NCBI GenBank assembly: GCA_044892525.1
Contig: CM097888.1
Location: 60,016,001 to 60,080,000 of the forward strand
Length of the DNA stretch: 64,000 nt
Direction: 5' to 3'
Source of the DNA: Schmidtea polychroa
Taxonomy: Eukaryota
The first letter of the stretch is position 1; each line of letters opens with the position of its first letter. Shown here piece after piece: positions 9,951 through 58,600 of this stretch. Below the pieces are notes generated by a model. The model was not told the DNA's origin, did no database searches, and worked only from the letters and a program-made list of their open reading frames with translations. A program made the position numbers and the translations under genes.

Positions 9951-10153
9951 AGTGAATTATAAATAAATTTATTTTAATATTTAAAAAGGGAATAGAAAAA
10001 TCACTTTTTGAATTTTTGTCCAAATAAAATTATTCAATTACTTGTCCTCAATATTGACAACTTTTATCATCATAATTATCTGTTCAAGAAGAAATTACTA
10101 TTATAAAATGGATAAATTAAAACAAATATTTTTTTTATTAAAAAATTACAAAA

Positions 10154-43461
<33,308 letters not shown>

Positions 43462-43689
43462 TATCAAATTTTAAAAATATTAAACTAAAAATTAAAAATG
43501 ATTAATTTAAACAAACCATTATAAAATAATTTAAAAATAATGAAAAATAATCACAATTTATTAGCAAAAAAATAATGAAAGCCAAAACGTTTTACATACA
43601 TAAAATTATTTACAATTTCAAGGATTTCATTAGGTTATTGAAAATTTAACACTACCTAGTATGAAATTACAACAATGGAGCACAATTTA

Positions 43690-46600
43690 TTAGGCAAACT
43701 CCGATAGTTTTGTCTCTTTAAAAAGCTGTTTCAAATATTGAATACCAGAAGAAACTTTAATTGCCGGTCCCAATTTCATACCTAGAACCTTCATTAAATC
43801 CATCTGTTTAAGACACATAAATGCAGCTCCATCGACTTCCTACAAAACCAATTTCTCAAAAGAAAATTCACATAAAATATAATTTACTTGATCAATAAAA
43901 GTTTTACTATATTGATCAGTTCCAATAACCGAAGATATTAATTGAGAAACTTCTTGACTATTCCATTGTAAAATTGATTTTTTAATATCCATTTCTTTGA
44001 TTTGGTCATTTATGTTTGAATTCTTTTTTTTATTTGATCCTCTTTTGCTTTTATTTTTTGTTTTTATATTTTTAATATTCTGTACATCTTGAATTATCTG
44101 AGAATTTTCCTCTTTTACCAATTTTAATGGGGGTAATATCTGCTCAACTATATTCCATTCCATAATGCGACGATAATCATCACTGGGATGATAAGGTGTT
44201 CGATTGGTATATGGTTTTAATACCGAGGAGGAAACAATGGCTACTGGATTGGGAATGAGATTTTTTGGTGGGTGATATTGAAAGAAAAATTTTTGATCTT
44301 CCCGAAATAACTCACAATTTTCGTCTTGTTCTTTCAGTTCTTGAAGAGATAAGGTAGGTGGGAAATCATAAATTTTAATCTGATGAAAATCACAAGGTGA
44401 ATTCTCAGTAAGTTGAGAATCATCAGGTCTAAAAATATAAAAATATATTATATAATGATTATATTAAACAATCAATTGTATTTTTGTTATTCATAGAAAC
44501 TCAGTTATATATTTAGAAAAACAAAAAGTGAATTAATCGTATTAGGCTCCTAATACATTGTAATGTAATTATTGCAACTGTTTCCTGCCAGCTTTTGAAT
44601 TTTTGATTACTATTAGAATCATTTAATCCCATATTTAATTCAATACGACATTTCACCTAGCAATTTACAATGCTCCTTGATTTTGGCACAGACTATTAAT
44701 TGGGACCAGAAATACACAAACATAAAACAAAATACATGAAAAACAAAATTTGGAATTTCTGAAGTAAATTTATATAGATATTAAATTACTAGAAAACATT
44801 TCAATTCAATTTGTTTAGATCACATCTAATATATAAAGATGAAAGTTTGTTTGTTAGTTTGTTACCCATAGAATTCCCCACTATTGGACCTAGGGTGCTG
44901 AAATTTTGCATGTGACCCTCATTTAACTCGGTACAGTTCATAGGCTGTTTCAACCCCAGGGTCACCTTGATTTACTACAGTAGATACCATTTCTGGTACG
45001 CTCGATTCGAAAATATATAGCTATAAATTTGTTCAATTCTCCTTTGCTTTCTCTCGCTAGATTGTGCCTTTGCGTTTCTTCGACCTACTGGCAATTCTGC
45101 TTACTTGCCGATCGCTTTTATACCCATTTCGTAATTTGATTTTACCTTGTCAAATTATTTTGGATCCATTTTCCGCGGGCTTCCTCTTATCTGCCTATTT
45201 AGTTCGGGCAATTTTCTTCTCTTTTTGATAGCTTGCCCCAATTTTAATTTAATTGCTTCTAGCTAATTTGATTGACCATTCGGGTCCTCTCACACTGATC
45301 GGGTTTTCCATTAGCTCAGGTTTTCTATTAGCTAATTAATTTTTAATTAATTTTAGTTTTTTGTAATTAATTCCTTCTAGGGAGCTCCCTTTGATTTTAT
45401 TTTTTTTGAACTCGTCTCATTGTTCGGCATCCACCTATACCAGTTTCCCCGGAAAATATTCATTTTTAATTTATTTTTGATTTTTAATTAATATTTTTAT
45501 ACTTTGGTTTATTATTGTGAATTTGGTGTTTTTATTGATTTTTAACTTCATTTTTGTACCAATCTTGTTAAACCCCAACAATATATTTATTTGTAAAATG
45601 TAACAATTATATCAGATTAAAAGAAAAAACCATTAACTGCTGACGAAATGACACTTGCTTTTGAATGGAGTTTTTTGTTTTATTTTTGAATGTAGTTTGT
45701 GTCGATTAAAATTAATTTTTAACAAAAATTAATTTTAATAATTTTTCTGAATATCTTTGGAATAAATTCTACCAAAGTTTTTTATAAATTATCTAAATTT
45801 CCACATTTCTATGAAATTTCTATCACATCAAAAATATTTTCAAAATTATTGGTAATTCCTTTTTTATATTCTTATTTATTTTCAAACGGTGTATTTTTTA
45901 TAAAATAAATTTGTATTATACAACCCGTATTTATGCATTATCTAGAAGATTTATCTAGAAGATTTATCTTTATTGAAAAGGGAATATCAAAAACATCGAT
46001 TATTTACTGATTCATAGTCAAGCTTTTTAATAAACATAATTATTCATTATAAATGTATTAAATATTTTGTTAGTTTTGTCCAATACTTAGTTTTAAAAAT
46101 TCTGGAAAACAATCTTATTTTCGTAAATATTTAAAATTATTAATATTATATTATTATAGATACGCTGCATTAGTGAGGCACGAGGAAAAGTTTGATTAAA
46201 ATTATTATTTATTATATAAAATAACTGATAAATTAAAAGGTTTTTATAAAATAATGAAATATAATTTTTTGCGATAAGATAATAAGTCTACCTAATTGCA
46301 TTGAGTTTATATAATCTATACAAATTTTCTACACTTCGCTAAAAATAAATATGATTCCTTGAACTTAATATTTTGATTTTATTAATGGCTTTTCCACTAC
46401 AATTTTTGAAAATTTATTTTTCCTCATAAAATTTATGTTTTACTGTGTATAAACTAACTTTTGTCTGTAGTTTTAGTTTAAATTAATTTTCTTCGGTTTT
46501 CGATCATAATTACTTTTTGACATGTGACTATTAAAAACATTTCGTAATAAAAATTACTGTAATTTTCCAGTTATTTGCAAATTACTTGATTCGGCAACTT

Positions 46601-49600: not shown

Positions 49601-52600
49601 TGCTATTTTTTAAGGCAAGAAAAATTATCGGGAATAGATTTCCAAGTTGTACGAATTTCATTTTCGCCATTTCTCCGGACTGCTCCAAATAATCGATCTC
49701 GTTCAATTTCTTCCAAAATGATTCTTAAATCAATGAATTTTTGCTTCCATATCGAACTAGATTGAAAAGCCACCAATTGCATCTCGAAATCTTCTAAATT
49801 CATAAACTCGAATATCGTTAAATTTAACTGTTCGTATGTATACATATCTGGACGAGTAATAAATTTTGAAGTTTCTTCAAATTGTCGAAATTGTATAAAT
49901 CTTGCCGAAAATTGTTCAATTGTAGCTTCTAAAACATTGTTGAATTCAGTTATTATTTTTGTTACATCGGGTTTTTCATGAACTTCTAAGTCCATAATAT
50001 ATTTTTTTTAATTTTTTATCTTGCTAAATTTACTGGTATTTATAGCTGAATATAATTCTGTTAGTGTCAAAATTCAATATAGTTACTATATTGAATTTCG
50101 ACACTGACAGAATTCTATTCAGCTTTAAACGCCATAAAAAATTTAGCTAGCAGATTTTTCTCAATTTTTGGATCAACTTACATATGTGAACAAATATTCT
50201 CGTGTTTGAACATTAAAAAGTCCAAAACCAGTTCGCAGCTTATAGATGTAAATTTGCAATCTGTGCTACGAATATCAACAAGTAAATTAGATCCTGACTA
50301 TAATAAACTTGTAGGAAATTTTTTTCAATTACAAATTGAAATCCTCTTAATTTTCATGTACTTATTTCATCATGATTTACTAAAGACATACATAATTTAT
50401 ATTATCGTTATTCTCATGTTAAAATTACAAATGCGTCTAAAAATAATCAAAGTATAAATAGAACCTTTTAATTTTAATTAATAGCCATCACTACCCATTC
50501 TAATTAGCATTCCAGAAAGTCTTGCCTCTTGTTAACCCAATAGCATTTTACATAAATATTTCTAATTTTACTTAAAGTTCAGAATGTTTCAGTTCGCCAA
50601 TTGTATAATTTTTATTTTATGTTTTATATACTTCATAGTGATTTTAATGTTTTCATATTTTTGCAGAAAATAAAACATTATCTTACATTTCATTTTGATT
50701 CATAGATAAATCTCTGATAAATTCATTCTGAATAGGATTTTTGTTTTCTTTCATTGAAAGATCCATTGGTTCTATATCATCTATTGGAATTTCTATTTCA
50801 AGAGATTTTTGTACAGAATTTATAGGCTCGTCTTGAACATTATCTAATGTTGATTCTGTGTTATTATTGATTGGAACTGTCGCACTGCTTTCATCGAGTG
50901 ACTGAATTATTGATAGGGGAATTCGATCAATTGTTTTAAAATCTTTATTCAAATTGCATTCAGCATATGGACAACCAGATGTCCTGTGTAATTATGTAAA
51001 AGTAAAATATATCGTGGATTTATAAACCTTTGATGATTTGAATATCTAGGACCTTTAACATGACCATATCCTTTACATCCATAAATAGGACACGCACTTG
51101 ATTCGATAGAAGCATCGACTAAATATTATAAAGCTAAAGTTTTAAGATATGAAAGGAACAATTTATAAAAAAATTCCTGTTTGCATTTAGCAAAAAAATT
51201 ATAATTTGAAAACTGAGAAACTAATTTAAAAAATAAAAATAAAATCATCATAAAATCAACGTACTAAATCTTATAGTTTAAAGATAAGCAATTTTAAAAT
51301 GTTAAAAATTATTTTAATATTTACAAATTCATATTCATCTATTGCAGGGGTTCTCAAAGTGCGGCCCTCGAACTGTTGAAATATGGCTCGTGAACCGCCA
51401 ATGTAAGATTAGAGATCATAATTTAAAAAAATATTTTGTATTTTTATTACAAAAAAAGGTTCAGTTGAAGTGAATTCAGACCAAATGCAAACCTATGTAT
51501 ACATGTGACTTCAAAAACAAGTTTCAAGCAATAGAAAATAAAACTTCTCAGTAAATGCAGCATTCTTTTGTAAGACATTTCCATGAAATAGTATAATATA
51601 TTCTAAGTCGAAGAAGTCTATTATTACTTTTTTAAAAACATTTTTGTATTTTGGCCCGACAAATAAAACTTTGGTAATCCTTGATCAATTGATTTCACCT
51701 TTGATCTTTTAATTAATTCAGAAATAATCATATTAATATTTGAATTACTATTGATCAAAAAAATATATAAGGTACGCAATATTTCAGTACAGCCTTTATC
51801 AATACACACTTGATGAAGTCTGTGCCGAAATAATTTGTACCTTATATATTGTTTTGATCAATAGTATTACAAATATTAATATGAAAATTATTTACATATT
51901 CAATTAATTCTAAAAATAAAATATCAGAAATACGTTAAAATTTTGTGTGCCCAATAAGTTCAATATAAAGATAAACGAAATCAGGAAATATTTTAAGGTT
52001 GATCTATAATAATAATGAAAATTAATGACATATCATAAGAAAATAGACCACTGGTGAAAAAACTAAAGAATTTTTACTGTTAAAGTATATCATTCCTTGT
52101 TTTTATTGTAATTGTTACTAATGAAATATCATTAGGAAATGTGATATTGAGATTTTTGGCTTTGAAATAGAAAATTTTTAATTTGAACTAAATGATGGTG
52201 ATTTATTTATTTTTATATTTTGGTTTGTGTTGTTAAATGAAAAAAGCATGAAAAAAATTTTTTTTAATATCTTTTAGTGGCGTTGGATGTAAAAACAATC
52301 CAATGTATTAAAAACGGATTTAAATGTTGTGCGATAATTTTGGGGCTCTATTTTATAGATATATGCTCAATAAAAACAGACTTACATGTAGGAGGAGGCT
52401 GTAAAACACATCCATTTTTTGCACACCATCCTACTGGGAGAATATTAGTCCATGAACTGCCGAGGTCAATTTTGTAATTGTATTTTTCTGACCAATCATC
52501 AAAACCAATTGTTACTTGAAATTCTTCATTTAACTTGGCAATATGCGCCACTCTTATGAGCTGTGGGCATCGTTTATCAATCACTTCACAACGCATACCC

Positions 52601-55600
52601 ACATCCAAATCGAACCACCACTGATTTCTCTAAAAATTATCTCCGTTTATAACTAGACTCAAATATAGATAACATTTTATTTCATTGAGTCTAAATTTCA
52701 AATTTTATCCTAAGAAACATTTGAGATTTACATGAGGATAAACGTTTAAAATTTTTGAATTACAGAGTTATTAAAATATTTTTATTAAAAAGTTTAAAAA
52801 AATGTTATATTTTTGAATTTTTCATTTAATTTGATTTCAAGTTTAAATTCTTGAAAACTTTTATTTTCATTTATTTCAACCAATGAGAAGGCAGAACATG
52901 AATTTTAAACAGATAATTAAAATAGCTAAATTCCTATATAATAATAATAATAATATTAATAATGCTTACTTCTTCGAAAATTGAATTAGGCACTGATTCT
53001 GAATTTGTTAATTTTAAATAACTATCCCAACTAAATGAGCTTAAATCATGTCCATAAGCTATATTTCGATAAAGACTAAAATTATTATATTCGGTTTATT
53101 TAAAATACCTGATGGTATTGACAGCACTTTTTCATTATCCTCACAATATCCTACCGGCAATAATAACGGTGAGCTGTAATGCGCCCACATATCATAGGAA
53201 GAATCCCAGCTATCAAAATGCACCAAAATATTTTCGCCAATTATATCTTTCACGGTAGCAACACAAATCATTCCAGAATTTCTTTTATCAACAGCTTCTA
53301 ACTTTTGACCAATAATAAAATTATTTTTAGATGAATTCTGAAATGTATAAATCCCAATAAAATCGCCATCAGTAAAATTAATTTACTGGATTTCTGACAA
53401 TAAAGAAACAGCTTTCGTGGGTGGCTTCTGATTTTGTTTTTGTTAAATAAACAGGCCATGAAAATGCAATATTTATGTAATCTAAATATTAAATTTATTT
53501 TTAATTTCGTTAAAACAACAATTTTTTAAAAACGCGTTTTAATAAATTAAAAAATAAAACCAATAATTATCTATATGTAGAACGCATTGAAATACATATA
53601 CACCTAAAACCCCTAAATATTTGACGATACAATTACAAATGAAATGAAAAATAGTTTAAAAGAACTAAAAAATTATTATGTAAAACTAAAGTTATATATT
53701 TCCTGAAAAAATCGAAAAACTAGCAAAAGAAAAAAAGCCTGTGTTTTTCACTGGGAAGCGATTGATTCAAATATATTTACAAATATCTGAGTTTTTTTAG
53801 AACAATAAAACAAAAAAAAATTGATAACAAAATATAAAATTTTACTTATTCTTTTCCTTTTTTAATAATAAAACACGATGGCTGGATATTGCATCATAGC
53901 TAACTATAAAATTTGAAAATATACTATCTTATAAGCTAATTTCATGTGTATCAATTTTCAACAAGATTTTAATATCTTTTGAATTTGAGGTTTTCAATAA
54001 TTCTATTGGCAATGCAAAAAAAATGGAATACTCTCTTACAAAAATAGGAAATAGTGTATTAATCTTTAAAGCAGTGATGCCCACAATATTTTCAACAAGT
54101 ACCAAAAATAAATAGTGAGAATTTAAAAAATTCAAATTTTTTATTAAAATCATTCATTAATATTATTGGCTAATTTTTCAAAATCAATTGAATCATCATT
54201 CATCGCTATTTTAAGTTGAATTTAAATTTGAATTTTGTAATCGATTCCTGTGTTTATTTTTAATTATTTTCAAAGCTGATCTCTTTCGATTGTAAATAAA
54301 TAATAAACAATAATTATTGATTTCAAGGTTAGGGTAATTGTTTCGAAAACTTTAACAAATATGGAAGTTTAAAAAGTGCCAATAAAAAGGCTAACGCGTG
54401 TCACACTTTGGGCACCACTGCTTTAAAAGCTTTGAATATGCAAACTTTAGAGAAAAAGAAGATGGATTGATCACGTAGCGTTACCTTTATTCTAGCTAAG
54501 TTTAATAAATTCGTCTTCCTGTCGTTTTATCATGTCTTGTTTATTCATTATTCTTAATAAATGGACGTCATTTTCAATAAGATAAATCAAGACCACATAG
54601 AGAAATATAGGTTGAGGAAACTTAAAGCAATCAGACTAGAAAGTCCTAATTCATCCATAGAACTCCTTGATATCATACTTTTTTCTATCAATGCAGTATT
54701 TTCTTGTAAAAAAGCATACTCTTTAAAGGCGTAACACTTGAAAAACGGGCTTCTGGAAATTTATGAAAAACAGAAAATGAATATTAGAAACTATCTATAT
54801 ATAAGAATTAAATTTACCTTTTTTCAGAAATGGAATACGAAAATTAGCTTCAGAATAGAGAACAAGGAAAATTATATTCATTCAAATGGTAGCTTAAGTT
54901 CGAGTAAAGATTGAAATTGGCACCCTTTTTATGTTTTGTTTATCGAATGATAATTTAAATTTAAATCAAATCAAATCATAAAAATACAAACTGTTTGTCT
55001 TTTAATTTTATGAATTTAAATTGCATTGTAAACATCAAGTTTAAAAGTAAATAAATAAATTAAGTCCGTAACCGGACACCAAAATCATGTTTGACAAAAA
55101 GTTTGTATGAAAAAGGGATACGATTAGATAAATATCGAGCTATAAAATTAAGTGTTAAAAGTTTTATCATTTTTCATTGAAAAATTAATGATTCAATAAA
55201 TTTTCCACTTTTTAAAATGTATGTCTCCCTAAAGCATTGATTGATTGGAGCTAATTCAATCCGGTTTCTTAAAAATTTTGAAACTTGGACAATTTTCGTT
55301 AACTCAGTTTACAAAATCACTCATTGTAGTTGGGTTTCTTTTTAATTTAAGATTAAATGAACATTTGGCATCTACCACATAATGCGAAAATTTGAATTTC
55401 TTTTTTAAATTGCAATCAGTATTAAAATTTTTATATGAATATTCATATAATAATTTAAACTTTATAAAATAAATAATATGTAACCTCTATTCATATTATT
55501 TGAGTTAATTTTATTTTACTGTTTCGAATTCGAACTTTTACTTAAATTAAGAATTTTTACTCATTTCGTCTGTCAAATTTTATTTTTTTAATTTGGTGAG

Positions 55601-58600
55601 TCGGTTTTTTAACATTTCACAGTAAAAACCCCGAAAATGGAAAAATTTATTTTATTTTAAACAACTATTTTAAAAGAACTATTTAAATTTCTTCGAAATA
55701 TAGCAATTTTAAAATAATATAAAACTAAATTGTTTGAATTAAACAAATTGTTATAATGTAAACGGGTGCAAAATAAATAGGTTAAAACATGTCATTATTT
55801 CATTTATTCAATAATTATACATATAATTATTATCCATAATATGAAATAATTGAAAATAAATCAAATTATAACATTGTTCGTCTTTTGAAACTCTATCATT
55901 AAAATGCAAATTTTCTCCAAAAAATATTCACTTTAATATCTTTAGAAAATAAAAGATAATTTAAATTTAAAATTTTATTTTATTTTTACTAATTATTCAA
56001 AATGTGAAAAAAAATTTTATTTTAACAAATTTATAAGTTAAAATTCATTTTTAATAAAAAATTTTAGAAATTTATATTTAATTGATTTTTAATTGTCCTT
56101 ACGATTTTGCAATTGTGAAATTAAATTATAAATCAAAACAACATTATTTACATATTATTGATTGATGATAAATTGTAAGTAGTAACTAATCGAATTAAAA
56201 TGAAGATAAAAATTGGAAAACTCAAAGTACCTTTTGGAGGTTGTAACTTTCTATTGTTATTCTCACACCAACCAGTTGGGAAGATTAATTGTGAATCTGA
56301 TAATGTCCAAAAATCAAATTGATCTTGATAACCATCAAAGTGCAATCGTAATCGACTACCTAAAATCTCAACAATTGTCAGTACGCAGAATAAACTTTCA
56401 TTGTTCGGATCAATTCCTTCAAGTTTTTGATTTACAGAGAATTTATATTTTGAATTGTATTCCATCTGTATATAAAATTACAAATAATTCATTCAAAGCC
56501 GAAAAATAGAAAAAAATATGGATTGACTTTTTAATCAAATTATCATTAGCTTGTATTTGGCTTGTACTTACTGTTTTGTGGAAACATTTTTTCAATGTTT
56601 AATATTTTATTAAGATATCACAAATGAACTTCTTCCACAAATAACCAATGTAATTGAAAAGGTTAAACGAGATGGTAAACTGTACAAGGGATATTACTGT
56701 GGCAATAAACTATAGAAAGCTGTATGCCATTTTCTATACAATTACAAATTGGATAAAAAATACTTCTGTATTTATGAGTTGTTTCGTTTTCATTAATATT
56801 CTTATCATAAAGTCAAATTCTAGGGTCTGGTTGCAAAGTCACGAATTCAATCCCAAGAGGGATCAAGTTTCTTACATGAAACCGATAAGAGCTAAGCTTC
56901 ATTTAGTTTTTGATTATAGATTAATTTTTAATATTATAAGTTTATTTTTCAAATTTCATCACTGATTTCTTTTCCATTGAAATTGTATTTTATAAAAAGC
57001 TTGAATCAGTAAATATATCAAAAATATCGATATATTTACTGATTCATAGTCAAGCTTTTTAATAAATGCTACCTCTGTTCCACAATAGTTGTCACATTTT
57101 GATACTTTTGGTCTGATTATTAAAATTGTGACAAGTATTATAGAACAAAATTTATGCATCAAATGTGACAATTATTGTGGAATGGAGGTAGTACAATTTT
57201 TTATATTCTATACAATTTTTCAACACCTTACAAAACATATGAAAAACCAGCTTTGGAACTTTTATGATAAAACATAAAATATTGATCTATATTCAAAAAC
57301 TAAATTAGGATAAATTTGTAAGTCAAAATTTTTAAATTTTAATAAAATTTGTATTTTACGAAAGGGCGAGATCTTTTTATGTATACATTGTAAAACATAG
57401 ACGTCTATTGAATAAGATAACTTTATAAATGTCCACATTTGAAAACAATATGTTAAATAAATATTCTATATTAAGTATAAATTTTACCAAAAACGCCAAT
57501 TTTGAAAAGAATATTAAAAATATAATCAAAAATTGAAATTTCGCCAAAATATAACATGAGTCACGCTTGAAAATAGTCTTGCTAAAATAAATAATCATAA
57601 TTTATAATGTGATAACTTTAAACATCTTTTCGGACGAATGTATTAAAAAAGCAAAAATACATGAATATTCTCGTTAGACTATATTTTGATCAGTTGATAT
57701 GTTTTCTGTCTAAATTTTCAATTACATTGTTAATTTTACATTTATTAATGTTTCTATTTTATAACCTTTTTCAAACAACAAATAAAATTACTTAAAACTT
57801 AAGTTTTATTTTCAACATTTTATGACATCAGTTAACTTCTTTTTTTTTAATCAATAAATTAGTTACGATTTGTTTGTTTTTATCAAAAAAAATAATTACA
57901 TAATAGTCATGTGTTATAATGAAAAAAATAAAGACAGAGCTTACATCAATGCTAGAGAATCGTATTCCAATATTGTCAAATAGTTTAGCTGGAACTGTTC
58001 TGCCATCGATTGATTTAAGATATTCCGTCCAATCAAAACTGCTAATTTTTGATTCTAGAAAAACATAAACTTACTACTTTCATTAATATAAGTAATTATA
58101 TTGATTGAGAAAATTATATTATTAGTCATTTAGTTGATTTTTCGTTTTTCATTGCTGGGATTAATATGGAACTGAAATTATAAACTATCGGATTATTATT
58201 TACCAGAAATATGGATTTATTTCGTAGTAAAAACTCTCGATCAAACATCAAATTTTTGGACAATTTATCTCTATACTTTTTCATGTTAAACATGCAATAC
58301 CTTATTTAAATTTCAATATTTTTAGTAAAATATNNNNNNNNNNNNNNNNNNNNNNNNNNNNNNNNNNNNNNNNNNNNNNNNNNNNNNNNNNNNNNNNNNN
58401 NNNNNNNNNNNNNNNNNNNNNNNNNNNNNNNNNNNNNNNNNNNNNNNNNNNNNNNNNNNNNNNNNNNNNNNNNNNNNNCTGTTTAAAAAAATAGTCAAAG
58501 AACGAAAGTTTGGTTCAAAAGTGGCAATTTATGAAAAACAAAAATAAGTTTAAATATCATTAAAATGTTTGATTTCAAAAAAGATTGGACATAGAAATTA

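What the first reader, a model, noticed from the sequence alone, without database searches (positions are those of the whole stretch)
43434..43700. Operon-like junction: L3MBTL stop only about 230 bp from the ACADS start, same strand
Seen on the minus strand: stop at 43690; the 13-mer CTAATAAATTGTG occurs twice (AATAAA at 43691-43686 and 43562-43557); then a U-rich tract and an acceptor ttttAG at 43486-43485, 23 nt before the ACADS ATG. The second AATAAA is about 70 nt from the acceptor. Known: this poly(A) / U-rich / trans-splice-site layout defines SL-resolved operons, and flatworms use SL trans-splicing. Alternative seen: a strong GTATGT donor at 43599 could make a 115-nt cis 5'-UTR intron, which would put the ACADS promoter in the L3MBTL 3' end. 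Either way a chromatin repressor and a mitochondrial enzyme that supplies or consumes short acyl-CoAs are tightly coupled.
Basis: partly seen in the sequence, partly recalled or inferred. Interest (0 to 1): 0.7.

Follow-up and report, generated by a model that had tools for sequence, protein, structure and literature searches.

The report
Tight L3MBTL–ACADS gene junction in planarian
In this planarian genome a chromatin-reader gene ends, at a poly(A) site seen in RNA, only 79 bases before the start codon of a fat-burning enzyme gene on the same strand; the layout fits a flatworm operon, but no RNA I could reach shows the two genes being made from one transcript.

Summary
Observation confirmed. 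On the minus strand, a three-MBT/C2HC/SAM (L3MBTL-like) gene stops at 43692-43690. A complete six-exon, 409-aa ACADS gene starts at ATG 43461.

RNA contigs add one new fact: the L3MBTL-like mRNA is polyadenylated at 43541, about 16 nt after the second AATAAA. The true gap from poly(A) site to ATG is therefore 79 nt. It is 63% T up to the acceptor and contains a single AG, the ttttAG at 43486-43485.

The genome carries real spliced-leader (SL) RNA genes, so trans-splicing is available.

The decisive evidence is missing:
- ACADS contigs stop at 43449, inside the coding sequence, so neither an SL nor an upstream exon is visible.
- No contig covers 43540-43450.
- No 43599-to-43485 splice was seen.
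- One run holds L3MBTL at depth 112 with no ACADS contig. Two others hold ACADS at 27-29 and L3MBTL at 7-13. This argues against strict co-expression.

Estimates: SL added at 43485, about 0.55; true co-transcription (operon), about 0.3-0.4; own promoter without splicing, about 0.3; cis 5'UTR intron, under 0.1. The proposed chromatin-metabolism coupling is unsupported.

This is a candidate new member of a known kind.

The parts
43888..44428 (-). Penultimate coding exon of the L3MBTL-like gene (first half of the SAM domain at its end)
   Evidence: RNA contigs X1 and X2 join 50687|44428 and 43888|43839. The frame is open.
43840..43887 (-). Last intron of the L3MBTL-like gene (48 nt, GT..AG)
   Evidence: A joint skipping 48 nt appears in X1 and X2. 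GTAAAT donor and TAG acceptor were read.
43690..43839 (-). Last coding exon of the L3MBTL-like gene (second half of SAM) including stop TAA 43692-43690
   Evidence: Pfam SAM_1 partial match. Contigs X1, X2 and X3 cover it.
43541..43689 (-). L3MBTL-like 3'UTR (149 nt). It carries both AATAAA hexamers, both copies of the 13-mer, the unused GTATGT (43599-43594) and a TGTAAATA at 43614-43607
   Evidence: The X3 contig runs 43839-43541 without a gap and then carries 18 untemplated A.
43681..43693 (-). 13-mer CTAATAAATTGTG, copy 1 (overlaps the stop codon and the first AATAAA, 43691-43686)
   Evidence: Contigs read through it to 43655, 43633 and 43541, so it is not the only poly(A) signal in use.
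43552..43564 (-). 13-mer CTAATAAATTGTG, copy 2 (holds the second AATAAA, 43562-43557), the poly(A) signal seen in use
   Evidence: The poly(A) tail starts 16 nt after the hexamer.
43541..43541 (-). Cleavage and poly(A) site of the L3MBTL-like mRNA (after a CA)
   Evidence: X3 contig: loose end of 18 T on the + strand before 43541. The genome there reads TTATTTTTAA on the minus strand, so the tail is not templated. The contig starts at the 3'-most GATC (43893), as in a 3'-fragment library.
43487..43540 (-). T-rich intergenic tract (54 nt, 63% T, 2% C, 6% G)
   Evidence: Background T on this strand is 35%. No RNA contig from the four runs lies here.
43485..43490 (-). ttttAG: candidate 3' splice (trans-splice) acceptor, the only AG between the poly(A) site and the ATG
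   Evidence: Its use is not shown, because no contig reaches it.
43434..43484 (-). ACADS exon 1 as predicted: 23-nt 5'UTR (43484-43462) plus ATG 43461 and 28 coding nt
   Evidence: The last 16 nt (43449-43434) are joined to exon 2 in contigs X1 and X4. An in-frame TAA at 43473-43471 fixes ATG 43461 as the start.
43224..43390 (-). ACADS exon 2 (end of presequence, start of the ACAD N domain). Intron 1 is 43433-43391 (43 nt)
   Evidence: Contigs X1 and X4. Pfam Acyl-CoA_dh_N.
10154..20597 (-). ACADS exons 3-6: 20597-20259, 20216-19914, 12672-12439, 10312-10154 including stop. Intron 2 (43223-20598) is 22.6 kb
   Evidence: The contig loose end matches 20597-20568. All introns are GT..AG and give an open 409-aa frame. 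Pfam middle and C domains. PDB short-chain ACAD.
50952..56477 (-). Upstream L3MBTL-like exons: MBT repeats at 56477-56151, 53382-53062 and 52629-52351; zf-C2HC at 51125-50952
   Evidence: Pfam MBT at E 8e-29, 2e-26 and 1e-17; zf-C2HC at 1e-7.

Best explanation
This is an operon-type junction between two separately matured mRNAs.

Shown:
- The L3MBTL-like pre-mRNA is cleaved and polyadenylated at 43541, using the second AATAAA.
- The ACADS mRNA contains exon 1 (at least 43449-43434) spliced to exon 2 and then, across a 22.6-kb intron, to exon 3.
- Its only possible start codon is ATG 43461.
- The genome encodes SL RNAs.

Inferred:
- Polymerase that has passed the L3MBTL poly(A) site continues through the 54-nt T-rich tract.
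- The ACADS 5' end is made by adding a spliced leader at the single AG (43486-43485). This would give SL + 23 nt + ATG.
- A supplementary promoter inside the L3MBTL 3' end (a 'hybrid operon') may also feed ACADS. That would explain why the two mRNAs do not rise and fall together.
For: - The poly(A) tail at 43541 lies 56 nt before the only AG and 79-80 nt before the ATG.
- That spacing matches intercistronic distances in Schistosoma mansoni operons, which have a median of 99 bp (PMC12582326).
- The acceptor has a strong T tract, and TTTTAG would be expected only about 0.05 times in a gap of this size.
- True SL RNA genes are present: an SL exon ending ...TTATATG, then a GTA donor and an Sm-like AATTTTTGA, found as inverted pairs on chromosome 2. 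The SL 19-mer has 133 genomic matches against 0 for the control pattern.
- No ACADS 5' exon or long 5'UTR appears anywhere in 43450-44550 in the runs where ACADS sits at depth 27-29.
- Introns in this window reach 22.6 kb (ACADS) and 6.3 kb (L3MBTL-like), so a 79-nt spacer between two genes stands out.
Against: - No SL-ACADS join and no RNA crossing 43540-43450 was seen in four runs.
- The ACADS contigs of X1 and X4 stop at 43449. That is 35 nt short of the acceptor, despite depth 27-29.
- Run X2 holds L3MBTL at depth 112 but no ACADS contig, whereas X1 and X4 hold ACADS at 27-29 and L3MBTL at 7-13. That is not what one shared promoter predicts. The tool itself warns that contig depths and holes are weak evidence.
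- The terminal AUG of the SL would open a 7-codon upstream ORF ending 2 nt before the ACADS AUG.
- ACADS spans 33 kb, which is long for a downstream operon gene.
- No operon has been documented in planarians in the papers I could read (PMC8629364).
Confidence: 0.38

Rival explanations
1. These are two ordinary, independently transcribed genes that happen to abut. ACADS has its own core promoter overlapping the L3MBTL 3'UTR and poly(A) site. Transcription starts inside the 79-nt gap, roughly 43470-43500, giving a short unspliced 5'UTR. The ttttAG is a chance match.
For: - Relative abundance of the two genes differs greatly between runs: X2 has L3MBTL at 112 and no ACADS, while X1 and X4 have ACADS at 27-29 and L3MBTL at 7-13.
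- The ACADS contig starts at 43449, about 20-50 nt from such a start site. That is similar to the roughly 40-nt shortfall of the same contig at its 3' end.
- Nothing upstream of 43449 is attached to ACADS in any contig.
- AT-rich TATA-like and initiator-like strings exist in the gap (TATAAT at 43523-43518, TCATTTT at 43501-43495). In 72% A+T DNA these carry little weight.
Against: - A well-formed acceptor as the only AG in the gap would be expected only about 5% of the time by chance.
- A promoter would have to share sequence with the upstream gene's poly(A) signal and cleavage site.
- Introns in this window run to many kb, so the 79-nt gap between the two genes is unexplained.
Confidence: 0.3
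2. ACADS is SL trans-spliced at 43485, but from its own promoter inside the last exon or 3'UTR of L3MBTL. A short outron overlapping the L3MBTL 3' end is discarded. There is no functional co-transcription with L3MBTL.
For: - The acceptor and SL-gene evidence is the same as for the operon reading.
- This reading also explains the uncoupled contig abundance.
- In flatworms most SL-trans-spliced genes are monocistronic (PMC12582326).
- The AAATTGT x5 cluster, spanning 43688-43438, could be a set of promoter or regulatory sites.
Against: - No outron-derived or SL-bearing RNA was seen.
- The outron would carry the working poly(A) signal at 43562-43557, which should cut many such transcripts.
- There is no direct evidence for a promoter.
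Confidence: 0.18
3. This is the reader's alternative: a cis-spliced 5'UTR intron. ACADS transcription starts upstream of 43599, inside the L3MBTL 3' end or further upstream. A non-coding first exon is spliced from donor GTATGT (43599) to acceptor 43485, removing 115 nt that include the poly(A) signal.
For: - GTATGT is rare on this strand (0.14 per kb) and is a plausible donor.
- The acceptor is good.
- In parasitic flatworms cis- and trans-splicing often share acceptor sites (PMC12582326).
Against: - No 43599-to-43485 joint appears in four runs.
- The polyadenylated X3 contig reads straight through 43599.
- In X4, with ACADS at depth 27, nothing lies between 43407 and 44069. In X1 only a depth-6.7 L3MBTL contig lies there. 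So no ACADS 5' exon of matching depth exists.
Confidence: 0.07
4. This is the reader's broader claim: the adjacency reflects a functional link between a chromatin repressor and short-chain acyl-CoA metabolism, with the two genes co-regulated as a unit.
For: Only the physical adjacency supports it.
Against: - Contig abundance of the two genes varies independently between runs.
- There is no synteny or co-expression evidence.
- ACADS has an ordinary mitochondrial presequence and an ordinary domain set.
Confidence: 0.05

Closest known systems
SL-resolved operons of flatworms (Schistosoma mansoni, cestodes, Macrostomum lignano) and SL2-type operons of Caenorhabditis elegans
   Same: - Two same-strand genes.
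- The upstream gene has its own AAUAAA and poly(A) site.
- A short T/U-rich spacer (56 nt here, against an S. mansoni median of 99 bp; PMC12582326) leads to a 3' splice acceptor with no usable donor between it and the poly(A) site.
- The acceptor lies 23 nt before the downstream AUG.
- The organism has SL RNA genes.
   Different: - The SL on the downstream mRNA and the polycistronic precursor, which define the class, were not observed here.
- The downstream gene spans 33 kb and contains a 22.6-kb transposon-filled intron.
- Contig abundance of the two genes looks uncoupled.
- Operons have not been documented in planarians in the literature I could read (PMC8629364).
Hybrid operons of C. elegans (an internal promoter in front of a downstream operon gene)
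   Same: They would reconcile an operon-type spacer with independent expression of the downstream gene.
   Different: This is purely an analogy. No promoter or start-site data exist here, and flatworms show no SL2-like specialised leader (PMC12582326).
Planarian SL RNA genes (Zayas et al. 2005 and Rossi et al. 2014, known to me only by citation in PMC12582326 and PMC7346339; the papers themselves are not held)
   Same: The genome holds SL RNA genes with a leader of about 41 nt ending in AUG, a GU donor and an Sm-like site.
   Different: Their use at the ACADS acceptor is not shown. I recalled the 19-mer query from memory and validated it only against this genome: 133 matches against 0 for the control, and the gene structure seen in L026 and L027.
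Mammalian ACADS and L3MBTL1/3/4
   Same: - ACADS: N, middle and C ACAD domains and the YEGTSEI motif. Best solved matches are rat and human SCAD.
- L3MBTL: three MBT repeats, a C2HC zinc finger and SAM.
   Different: I know of no such adjacency of these two genes in other animals (my own knowledge, not tested here).

Membership tests
SL-resolved operon | Adjacent genes on the same strand with a short intercistronic distance (300 bp or less in flatworm surveys) | tested here: met
   Stop at 43690 to ATG at 43461 is 228 nt. Poly(A) site at 43541 to ATG is 79 nt.
SL-resolved operon | The upstream mRNA is 3'-processed (AAUAAA plus poly(A)) just upstream of the downstream gene's acceptor | tested here: met
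   The X3 contig ends at 43541 with 18 untemplated A, 16 nt after AATAAA 43562-43557 and 56 nt before the AG. This rests on one contig from one run.
SL-resolved operon | The downstream mRNA carries the spliced leader at that acceptor | tested here: inconclusive
   ACADS contigs (X1, X4) end at 43449, before the acceptor, so neither an SL nor genomic 5'UTR is seen.
SL-resolved operon | A polycistronic precursor spans both genes | tested here: inconclusive
   No contig covers 43540-43450 in four runs. Contigs drop rare molecules, so absence is weak evidence.
SL-resolved operon | The downstream gene depends on the upstream promoter (no independent start site) | not testable with these tools
   This needs CAGE, TSS-seq, chromatin marks or promoter perturbation. 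The uncoupled contig abundance leans against strict dependence.
SL-resolved operon | The organism has SL RNA genes and SL trans-splicing | tested here: met
   SL RNA genes in L026 and L027 have an SL exon, a GTA donor and an Sm-like site. Planarian trans-splicing is cited in PMC12582326 and PMC10899757.
Short-chain acyl-CoA dehydrogenase (ACADS) | ACAD N, middle and C domains in one open frame, with the catalytic-base motif YEG | tested here: met
   PF02771, PF02770 and PF00441 match. The 409-aa frame contains ...[10 protein letters not shown].... That the Glu of YEG is the catalytic base is established knowledge for SCAD and MCAD.
Short-chain acyl-CoA dehydrogenase (ACADS) | Closer to SCAD than to other ACAD classes | tested here: met
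   Exon 3 scores E 1e-47 to 2e-46 against rat and human SCAD. It scores 1e-23 or weaker against bacterial ACAD/butyryl-CoA dehydrogenases and about 1e-19 to 1e-12 against IVD, GCDH and MCAD. The whole protein is 72-74% identical to animal ACADS.
L3MBTL family | Three MBT repeats followed by a C2HC zinc finger and a C-terminal SAM domain | tested here: met
   MBT x3 (E 8e-29, 2e-26, 1e-17), zf-C2HC (1e-7, just under the cut-off) and a partial SAM_1 match (0.009, below the cut-off because the domain is split by an intron). Exon joins are seen in contigs.

The most novel reading that the evidence does not exclude
This may be the first concrete SL-resolved operon in a planarian. An L3MBTL-like chromatin reader and mitochondrial ACADS would be transcribed as one unit and separated by polyadenylation at 43541 and SL addition at 43485. 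The five-fold AAATTGT cluster across the junction would act as an intercistronic or promoter signal. It would show that operons survive in a transposon-bloated 780-Mb flatworm genome, even with a 33-kb downstream gene.
Probability: 0.3. Interest if true: 0.5.

Novelty: new member of a known kind. Interest (0 to 1): 0.32.

Why it matters
SL trans-splicing is established in planarians, but the papers I could read give no estimate of operons in them (PMC8629364). A verified dicistron in the main regeneration model would show that operon organisation extends to free-living triclads with very large genomes. It would also give a defined poly(A)-to-acceptor spacer of 56 nt for studying how flatworms, which lack an SL2-type leader, keep the polymerase going past a poly(A) site.

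If ACADS instead has its own promoter, the locus is an example of a promoter overlapping a neighbour's 3' end, which is ordinary. Either way, the suggested link between chromatin repression and acyl-CoA metabolism has no support beyond adjacency.

Tried and rejected
1. Looking for planarian ACADS transcripts in the protein collections, to read their 5' ends:
   - the exon-2 ORF gave no hit;
   - the exhaustive representative search gave only fragments of 67% identity or less from other organisms;
   - a profile built from an alligator ACADS scaffold plus the window's exons returned 120 animal ACADS, none above 74% identity to the window protein.
   The collection appears to hold, or to serve, no Schmidtea ACADS.
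2. The look-up of encoding contigs on P0001, on P0002 and on the 42-aa L3MBTL terminal ORF gave no usable planarian contig. L029 and L030 have no L3MBTL-like sequence upstream. Synteny in other flatworms therefore could not be tested.
3. The partial ACADS paralogue downstream shares only the coding part of exon 2 (73% at the DNA level) and nothing of the junction, so it says nothing about conserved signals.
4. The junction is single-copy. Two 77-79% matches to 43557-43470 elsewhere in the genome are AT-rich low-complexity sequence, not a repeat family.
5. The trematode UQCRB-enolase operon is not adjacent in this genome. This neither supports nor refutes planarian operons.
6. Rfam finds nothing in the window.
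7. Earlier notes of the scan mentioning trans-splicing concern transposon cargo arrays and gave no usable evidence.
8. The paper PMC3994195 (Rossi et al. 2014) is not held.
9. The first AATAAA as the main poly(A) signal is rejected, because three runs read through it.
Full report
**Context**

The window is chromosome-scale contig C4:60016001-60080000 of a 781-Mb genome with four large chromosomes. It is about 28% G+C. It carries planarian-type SL RNA genes, so I treat it as a Schmidtea-like planarian. Everything relevant lies on the minus strand.

**Observation**

Reading 44100-43200 on the minus strand and recomputing positions confirms every coordinate in the finding:
- stop TAA at 43692-43690, followed by a second TAA;
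- CTAATAAATTGTG at 43693-43681 and 43564-43552, the only two copies in 64 kb;
- AATAAA at 43691-43686 and 43562-43557;
- GTATGT at 43599-43594;
- ttttAG at 43490-43485;
- ATG at 43461, 23 nt after the AG.

**The two genes**

The upstream gene has three MBT repeats (56477-56151, 53382-53062, 52629-52351), a C2HC zinc finger (51125-50952) and a C-terminal SAM domain split by the last intron. That is the L3MBTL architecture.

The downstream gene is a clean six-exon ACADS:
- 43461-43434
- 43390-43224
- 20597-20259
- 20216-19914
- 12672-12439
- 10312-10154 (including the stop)

All its introns are GT..AG, and the frame is open for 409 aa with a basic presequence. ACAD N, middle and C domains are present. 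Exon 3 matches rat and human short-chain acyl-CoA dehydrogenase at E 1e-47, against 1e-23 for the next class. An in-frame TAA at 43473-43471 fixes ATG 43461 as the start codon. Intron 2 is 22.6 kb, richer in G+C, and holds a retroelement integrase.

**RNA evidence**

I had one search for sequencing runs and one read-laying run. Four probable RNA runs from two studies were laid on 43050-44550. All are Logan contigs, so they show presence and joins, not starts or expression levels.

1. *L3MBTL splicing.* The last L3MBTL intron (43887-43840, 48 nt) is removed in X1 and X2. Exon 44428-43888 is joined to an exon ending at 50687.
2. *L3MBTL poly(A) site.*
   - An X3 contig begins at the 3'-most GATC of the mRNA (43893), crosses the splice, runs unbroken to 43541 and then carries 18 A.
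   - The genome does not encode these A; the minus strand continues TTATTTTTAA.
   - This is a poly(A) site after a CA, 16 nt downstream of the second AATAAA.
   - The contig shape, GATC to poly(A), suggests a 3'-fragment library, which makes the site credible. It is still one contig from one run.
3. *The first AATAAA.* X1, X2 and X3 all read through it, to 43655, 43633 and 43541. It is therefore not the sole signal.
4. *ACADS splicing.* Contigs in X1 and X4 (same sample, depth 27-29) consist of 16 nt of exon 1 (43449-43434), exon 2, and a continuation that matches 20597-20568. Introns 1 and 2 are thereby proven.
5. *The ACADS 5' end.* These contigs stop at 43449, 12 nt inside the coding sequence. 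The 5'UTR is not seen, whether SL-derived or genomic.
6. *The gap.* No contig from any run lies on 43540-43450. The only joint reported in the whole stretch is the L3MBTL intron.

**Anatomy of the gap**

From the poly(A) site to the ATG is 79 nt. The first 54 nt are 63% T, 2% C and 6% G. The single AG of the gap is the ttttAG. After it come 23 nt and then the ATG. TTTTAG occurs 0.69 times per kb on this strand, so about 0.05 would be expected here.

No GT lies between the poly(A) site and the AG apart from two in GGTTTGTTT (43516, 43512). This is the layout of an intercistronic region of the type with a spacer. The 56-nt distance from poly(A) site to acceptor lies below the 99-bp median reported for Schistosoma mansoni operons but above the 5-bp minimum (PMC12582326).

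**SL machinery**

A 19-mer that I recalled as the start of the planarian SL matched 133 places in the genome, against 0 for the reversed control.

Two inverted pairs on chromosome 2 are true SL RNA genes. Each has a leader ending ...TTATATG, immediately followed by GTA(C/T)GG, stem sequences and an Sm-like AATTTTTGA. Trans-splicing is therefore available to this gene.

If the SL were added at 43484, its terminal AUG would open a 7-codon upstream ORF ending 2 nt before the ACADS AUG. This is a mild cost. The genome also holds SL copies fused to other sequences, and at least one of these (L020) shows a similarly short out-of-frame reading from the SL AUG.

**Weighing the readings**

*Cis intron (43599 to 43485).* This is the least likely.
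- No such joint is seen.
- The polyadenylated L3MBTL contig reads through the donor.
- In X4 nothing at all lies between 43407 and 44069, although ACADS is at depth 27.

*SL at the acceptor versus a start site in the gap.* The contigs are silent on this.
- For the SL: a well-formed acceptor is the only AG in the gap, and that is unlikely by chance.
- For a start site: a contig at depth 27-29 stops 35 nt short of the acceptor. That is easier to understand if the mRNA ends 20-50 nt upstream of 43449 than if about 76 further nt follow (5'UTR plus SL).
- The same contig also falls about 40 nt short at its 3' end, so end loss is large in these data anyway.

*Co-transcription.*
- The very short spacer favours it, given that introns in this window run to many kb.
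- Against strict coupling, X2 holds a 2450-nt L3MBTL contig at depth 112 but no ACADS contig. The word share of 0.52 agrees with that. X1 and X4 show ACADS above L3MBTL.
- The runs were chosen for holding this stretch, which is mostly L3MBTL exon. Holes in contig sets also prove little. I count this only as moderate evidence for at least partly independent control.

*My estimates.*
- SL at 43485: about 0.55.
- Co-transcription: about 0.3-0.4 (my best reading carries 0.38).
- Own start site without splicing: about 0.3.
- Cis intron: about 0.07.

**The repeat**

The duplicated 13-mer is modestly unusual. Its probability is about 0.008 under a Markov model, but 7% of real 267-nt tiles hold a direct repeat that long.

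More striking, its core AAATTGT occurs five times between 43688 and 43438. Two copies lie in the 13-mers, one in the 3'UTR and two in ACADS exon 1. Only 0.10 would be expected. A sliding scan of the whole strand shows this is the only place where any non-trivial heptamer reaches five copies. I have no explanation. It could be a set of protein-binding sites for a promoter, an RNA signal, or the residue of small duplications.

**Comparison with what is known**

The junction works like, or at least is built like, the spacer-type SL operons of flatworms and nematodes. Membership of that class is not established, because the two defining molecules were not observed: the SL-bearing downstream mRNA and the polycistronic precursor.

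The papers I could read say planarian trans-splicing is known but give no estimate of operons (PMC8629364; PMC12582326). If verified, this would be a new member of a known kind and a first concrete example for planarians. If ACADS has its own promoter, the locus is ordinary.

**What I could not do**

- The protein collections returned no Schmidtea ACADS, so transcript 5' ends could not be fetched that way.
- No other flatworm genome was reachable for synteny.
- The assembly gap at 58334-58478 was left untouched.

Noticed in passing
window 43438-43688 (minus strand): The heptamer AAATTGT occurs 5 times (starts at 43688, 43618, 43559, 43455, 43444) against 0.10 expected. It is the unique maximum cluster of any non-trivial 7-mer in the 64-kb window. 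It spans the L3MBTL stop, the 3'UTR and ACADS exon 1. Its function is unknown.
   Followed up: partly
L017-L024, L028 (own genome, chromosomes 1 and C18); list: Most of the 133 genomic matches to the SL 19-mer are not SL RNA genes. In the copies examined, the full leader is preceded by a conserved ..GTAGTGAG and followed directly by different ORF-like sequences. They look like retro-copied SL-trans-spliced mRNAs or SL-bearing mobile elements.
   Followed up: no
L026 (C2:113231700-113234000) and L027 (C2:109761000-109762500): True SL RNA genes are arranged as inverted pairs about 1.1-1.9 kb apart. They have an SL exon of about 41 nt ending in ATG, a GTA donor and an Sm-like AATTTTTGA.
   Followed up: partly
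window 20598-43223 (minus strand): ACADS intron 2 is 22.6 kb and G+C-richer (0.31-0.40 against about 0.27). It contains a retroelement integrase ORF at 42338-41748 (Pfam rve, E 1.6e-6).
   Followed up: no
window 6374-6234 and 3928-3809 (minus strand): A partial ACADS paralogue lies downstream of the ACADS 3' end. It has exon-2-like and exon-3-like pieces only, at 50-58% protein identity to an alligator ACADS used as guide. At the DNA level its exon-2 part is 73% identical to ACADS exon 2. It shares nothing with the junction region.
   Followed up: partly
window 43607-43614 (minus strand): TGTAAATA, a Pumilio-type UGUANAUA element, sits in the L3MBTL-like 3'UTR between the two AATAAA hexamers. 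It is a single copy in AT-rich sequence, so it may be chance.
   Followed up: no
window 43633: The 2450-nt L3MBTL contig of run X2 (depth 112) ends at 43633 without a poly(A) tail, 92 nt before the mapped site. The cause could be a polymorphism, a graph branch or an end of cloned or dsRNA material. It was not resolved.
   Followed up: no
window 10120-10156 (minus strand): The ACADS 3'UTR appears very short. AATAAA lies about 20 nt after the stop inside TTAATAAAAAAAATA. The ACADS contigs end 7 nt before the end of the stop codon.
   Followed up: no
window 43966 and 44023: Run X1 reads C for T at 43966. Run X3 has one extra T after 44023, in an A-rich coding stretch. These are probably strain polymorphisms or contig errors.
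   Followed up: no
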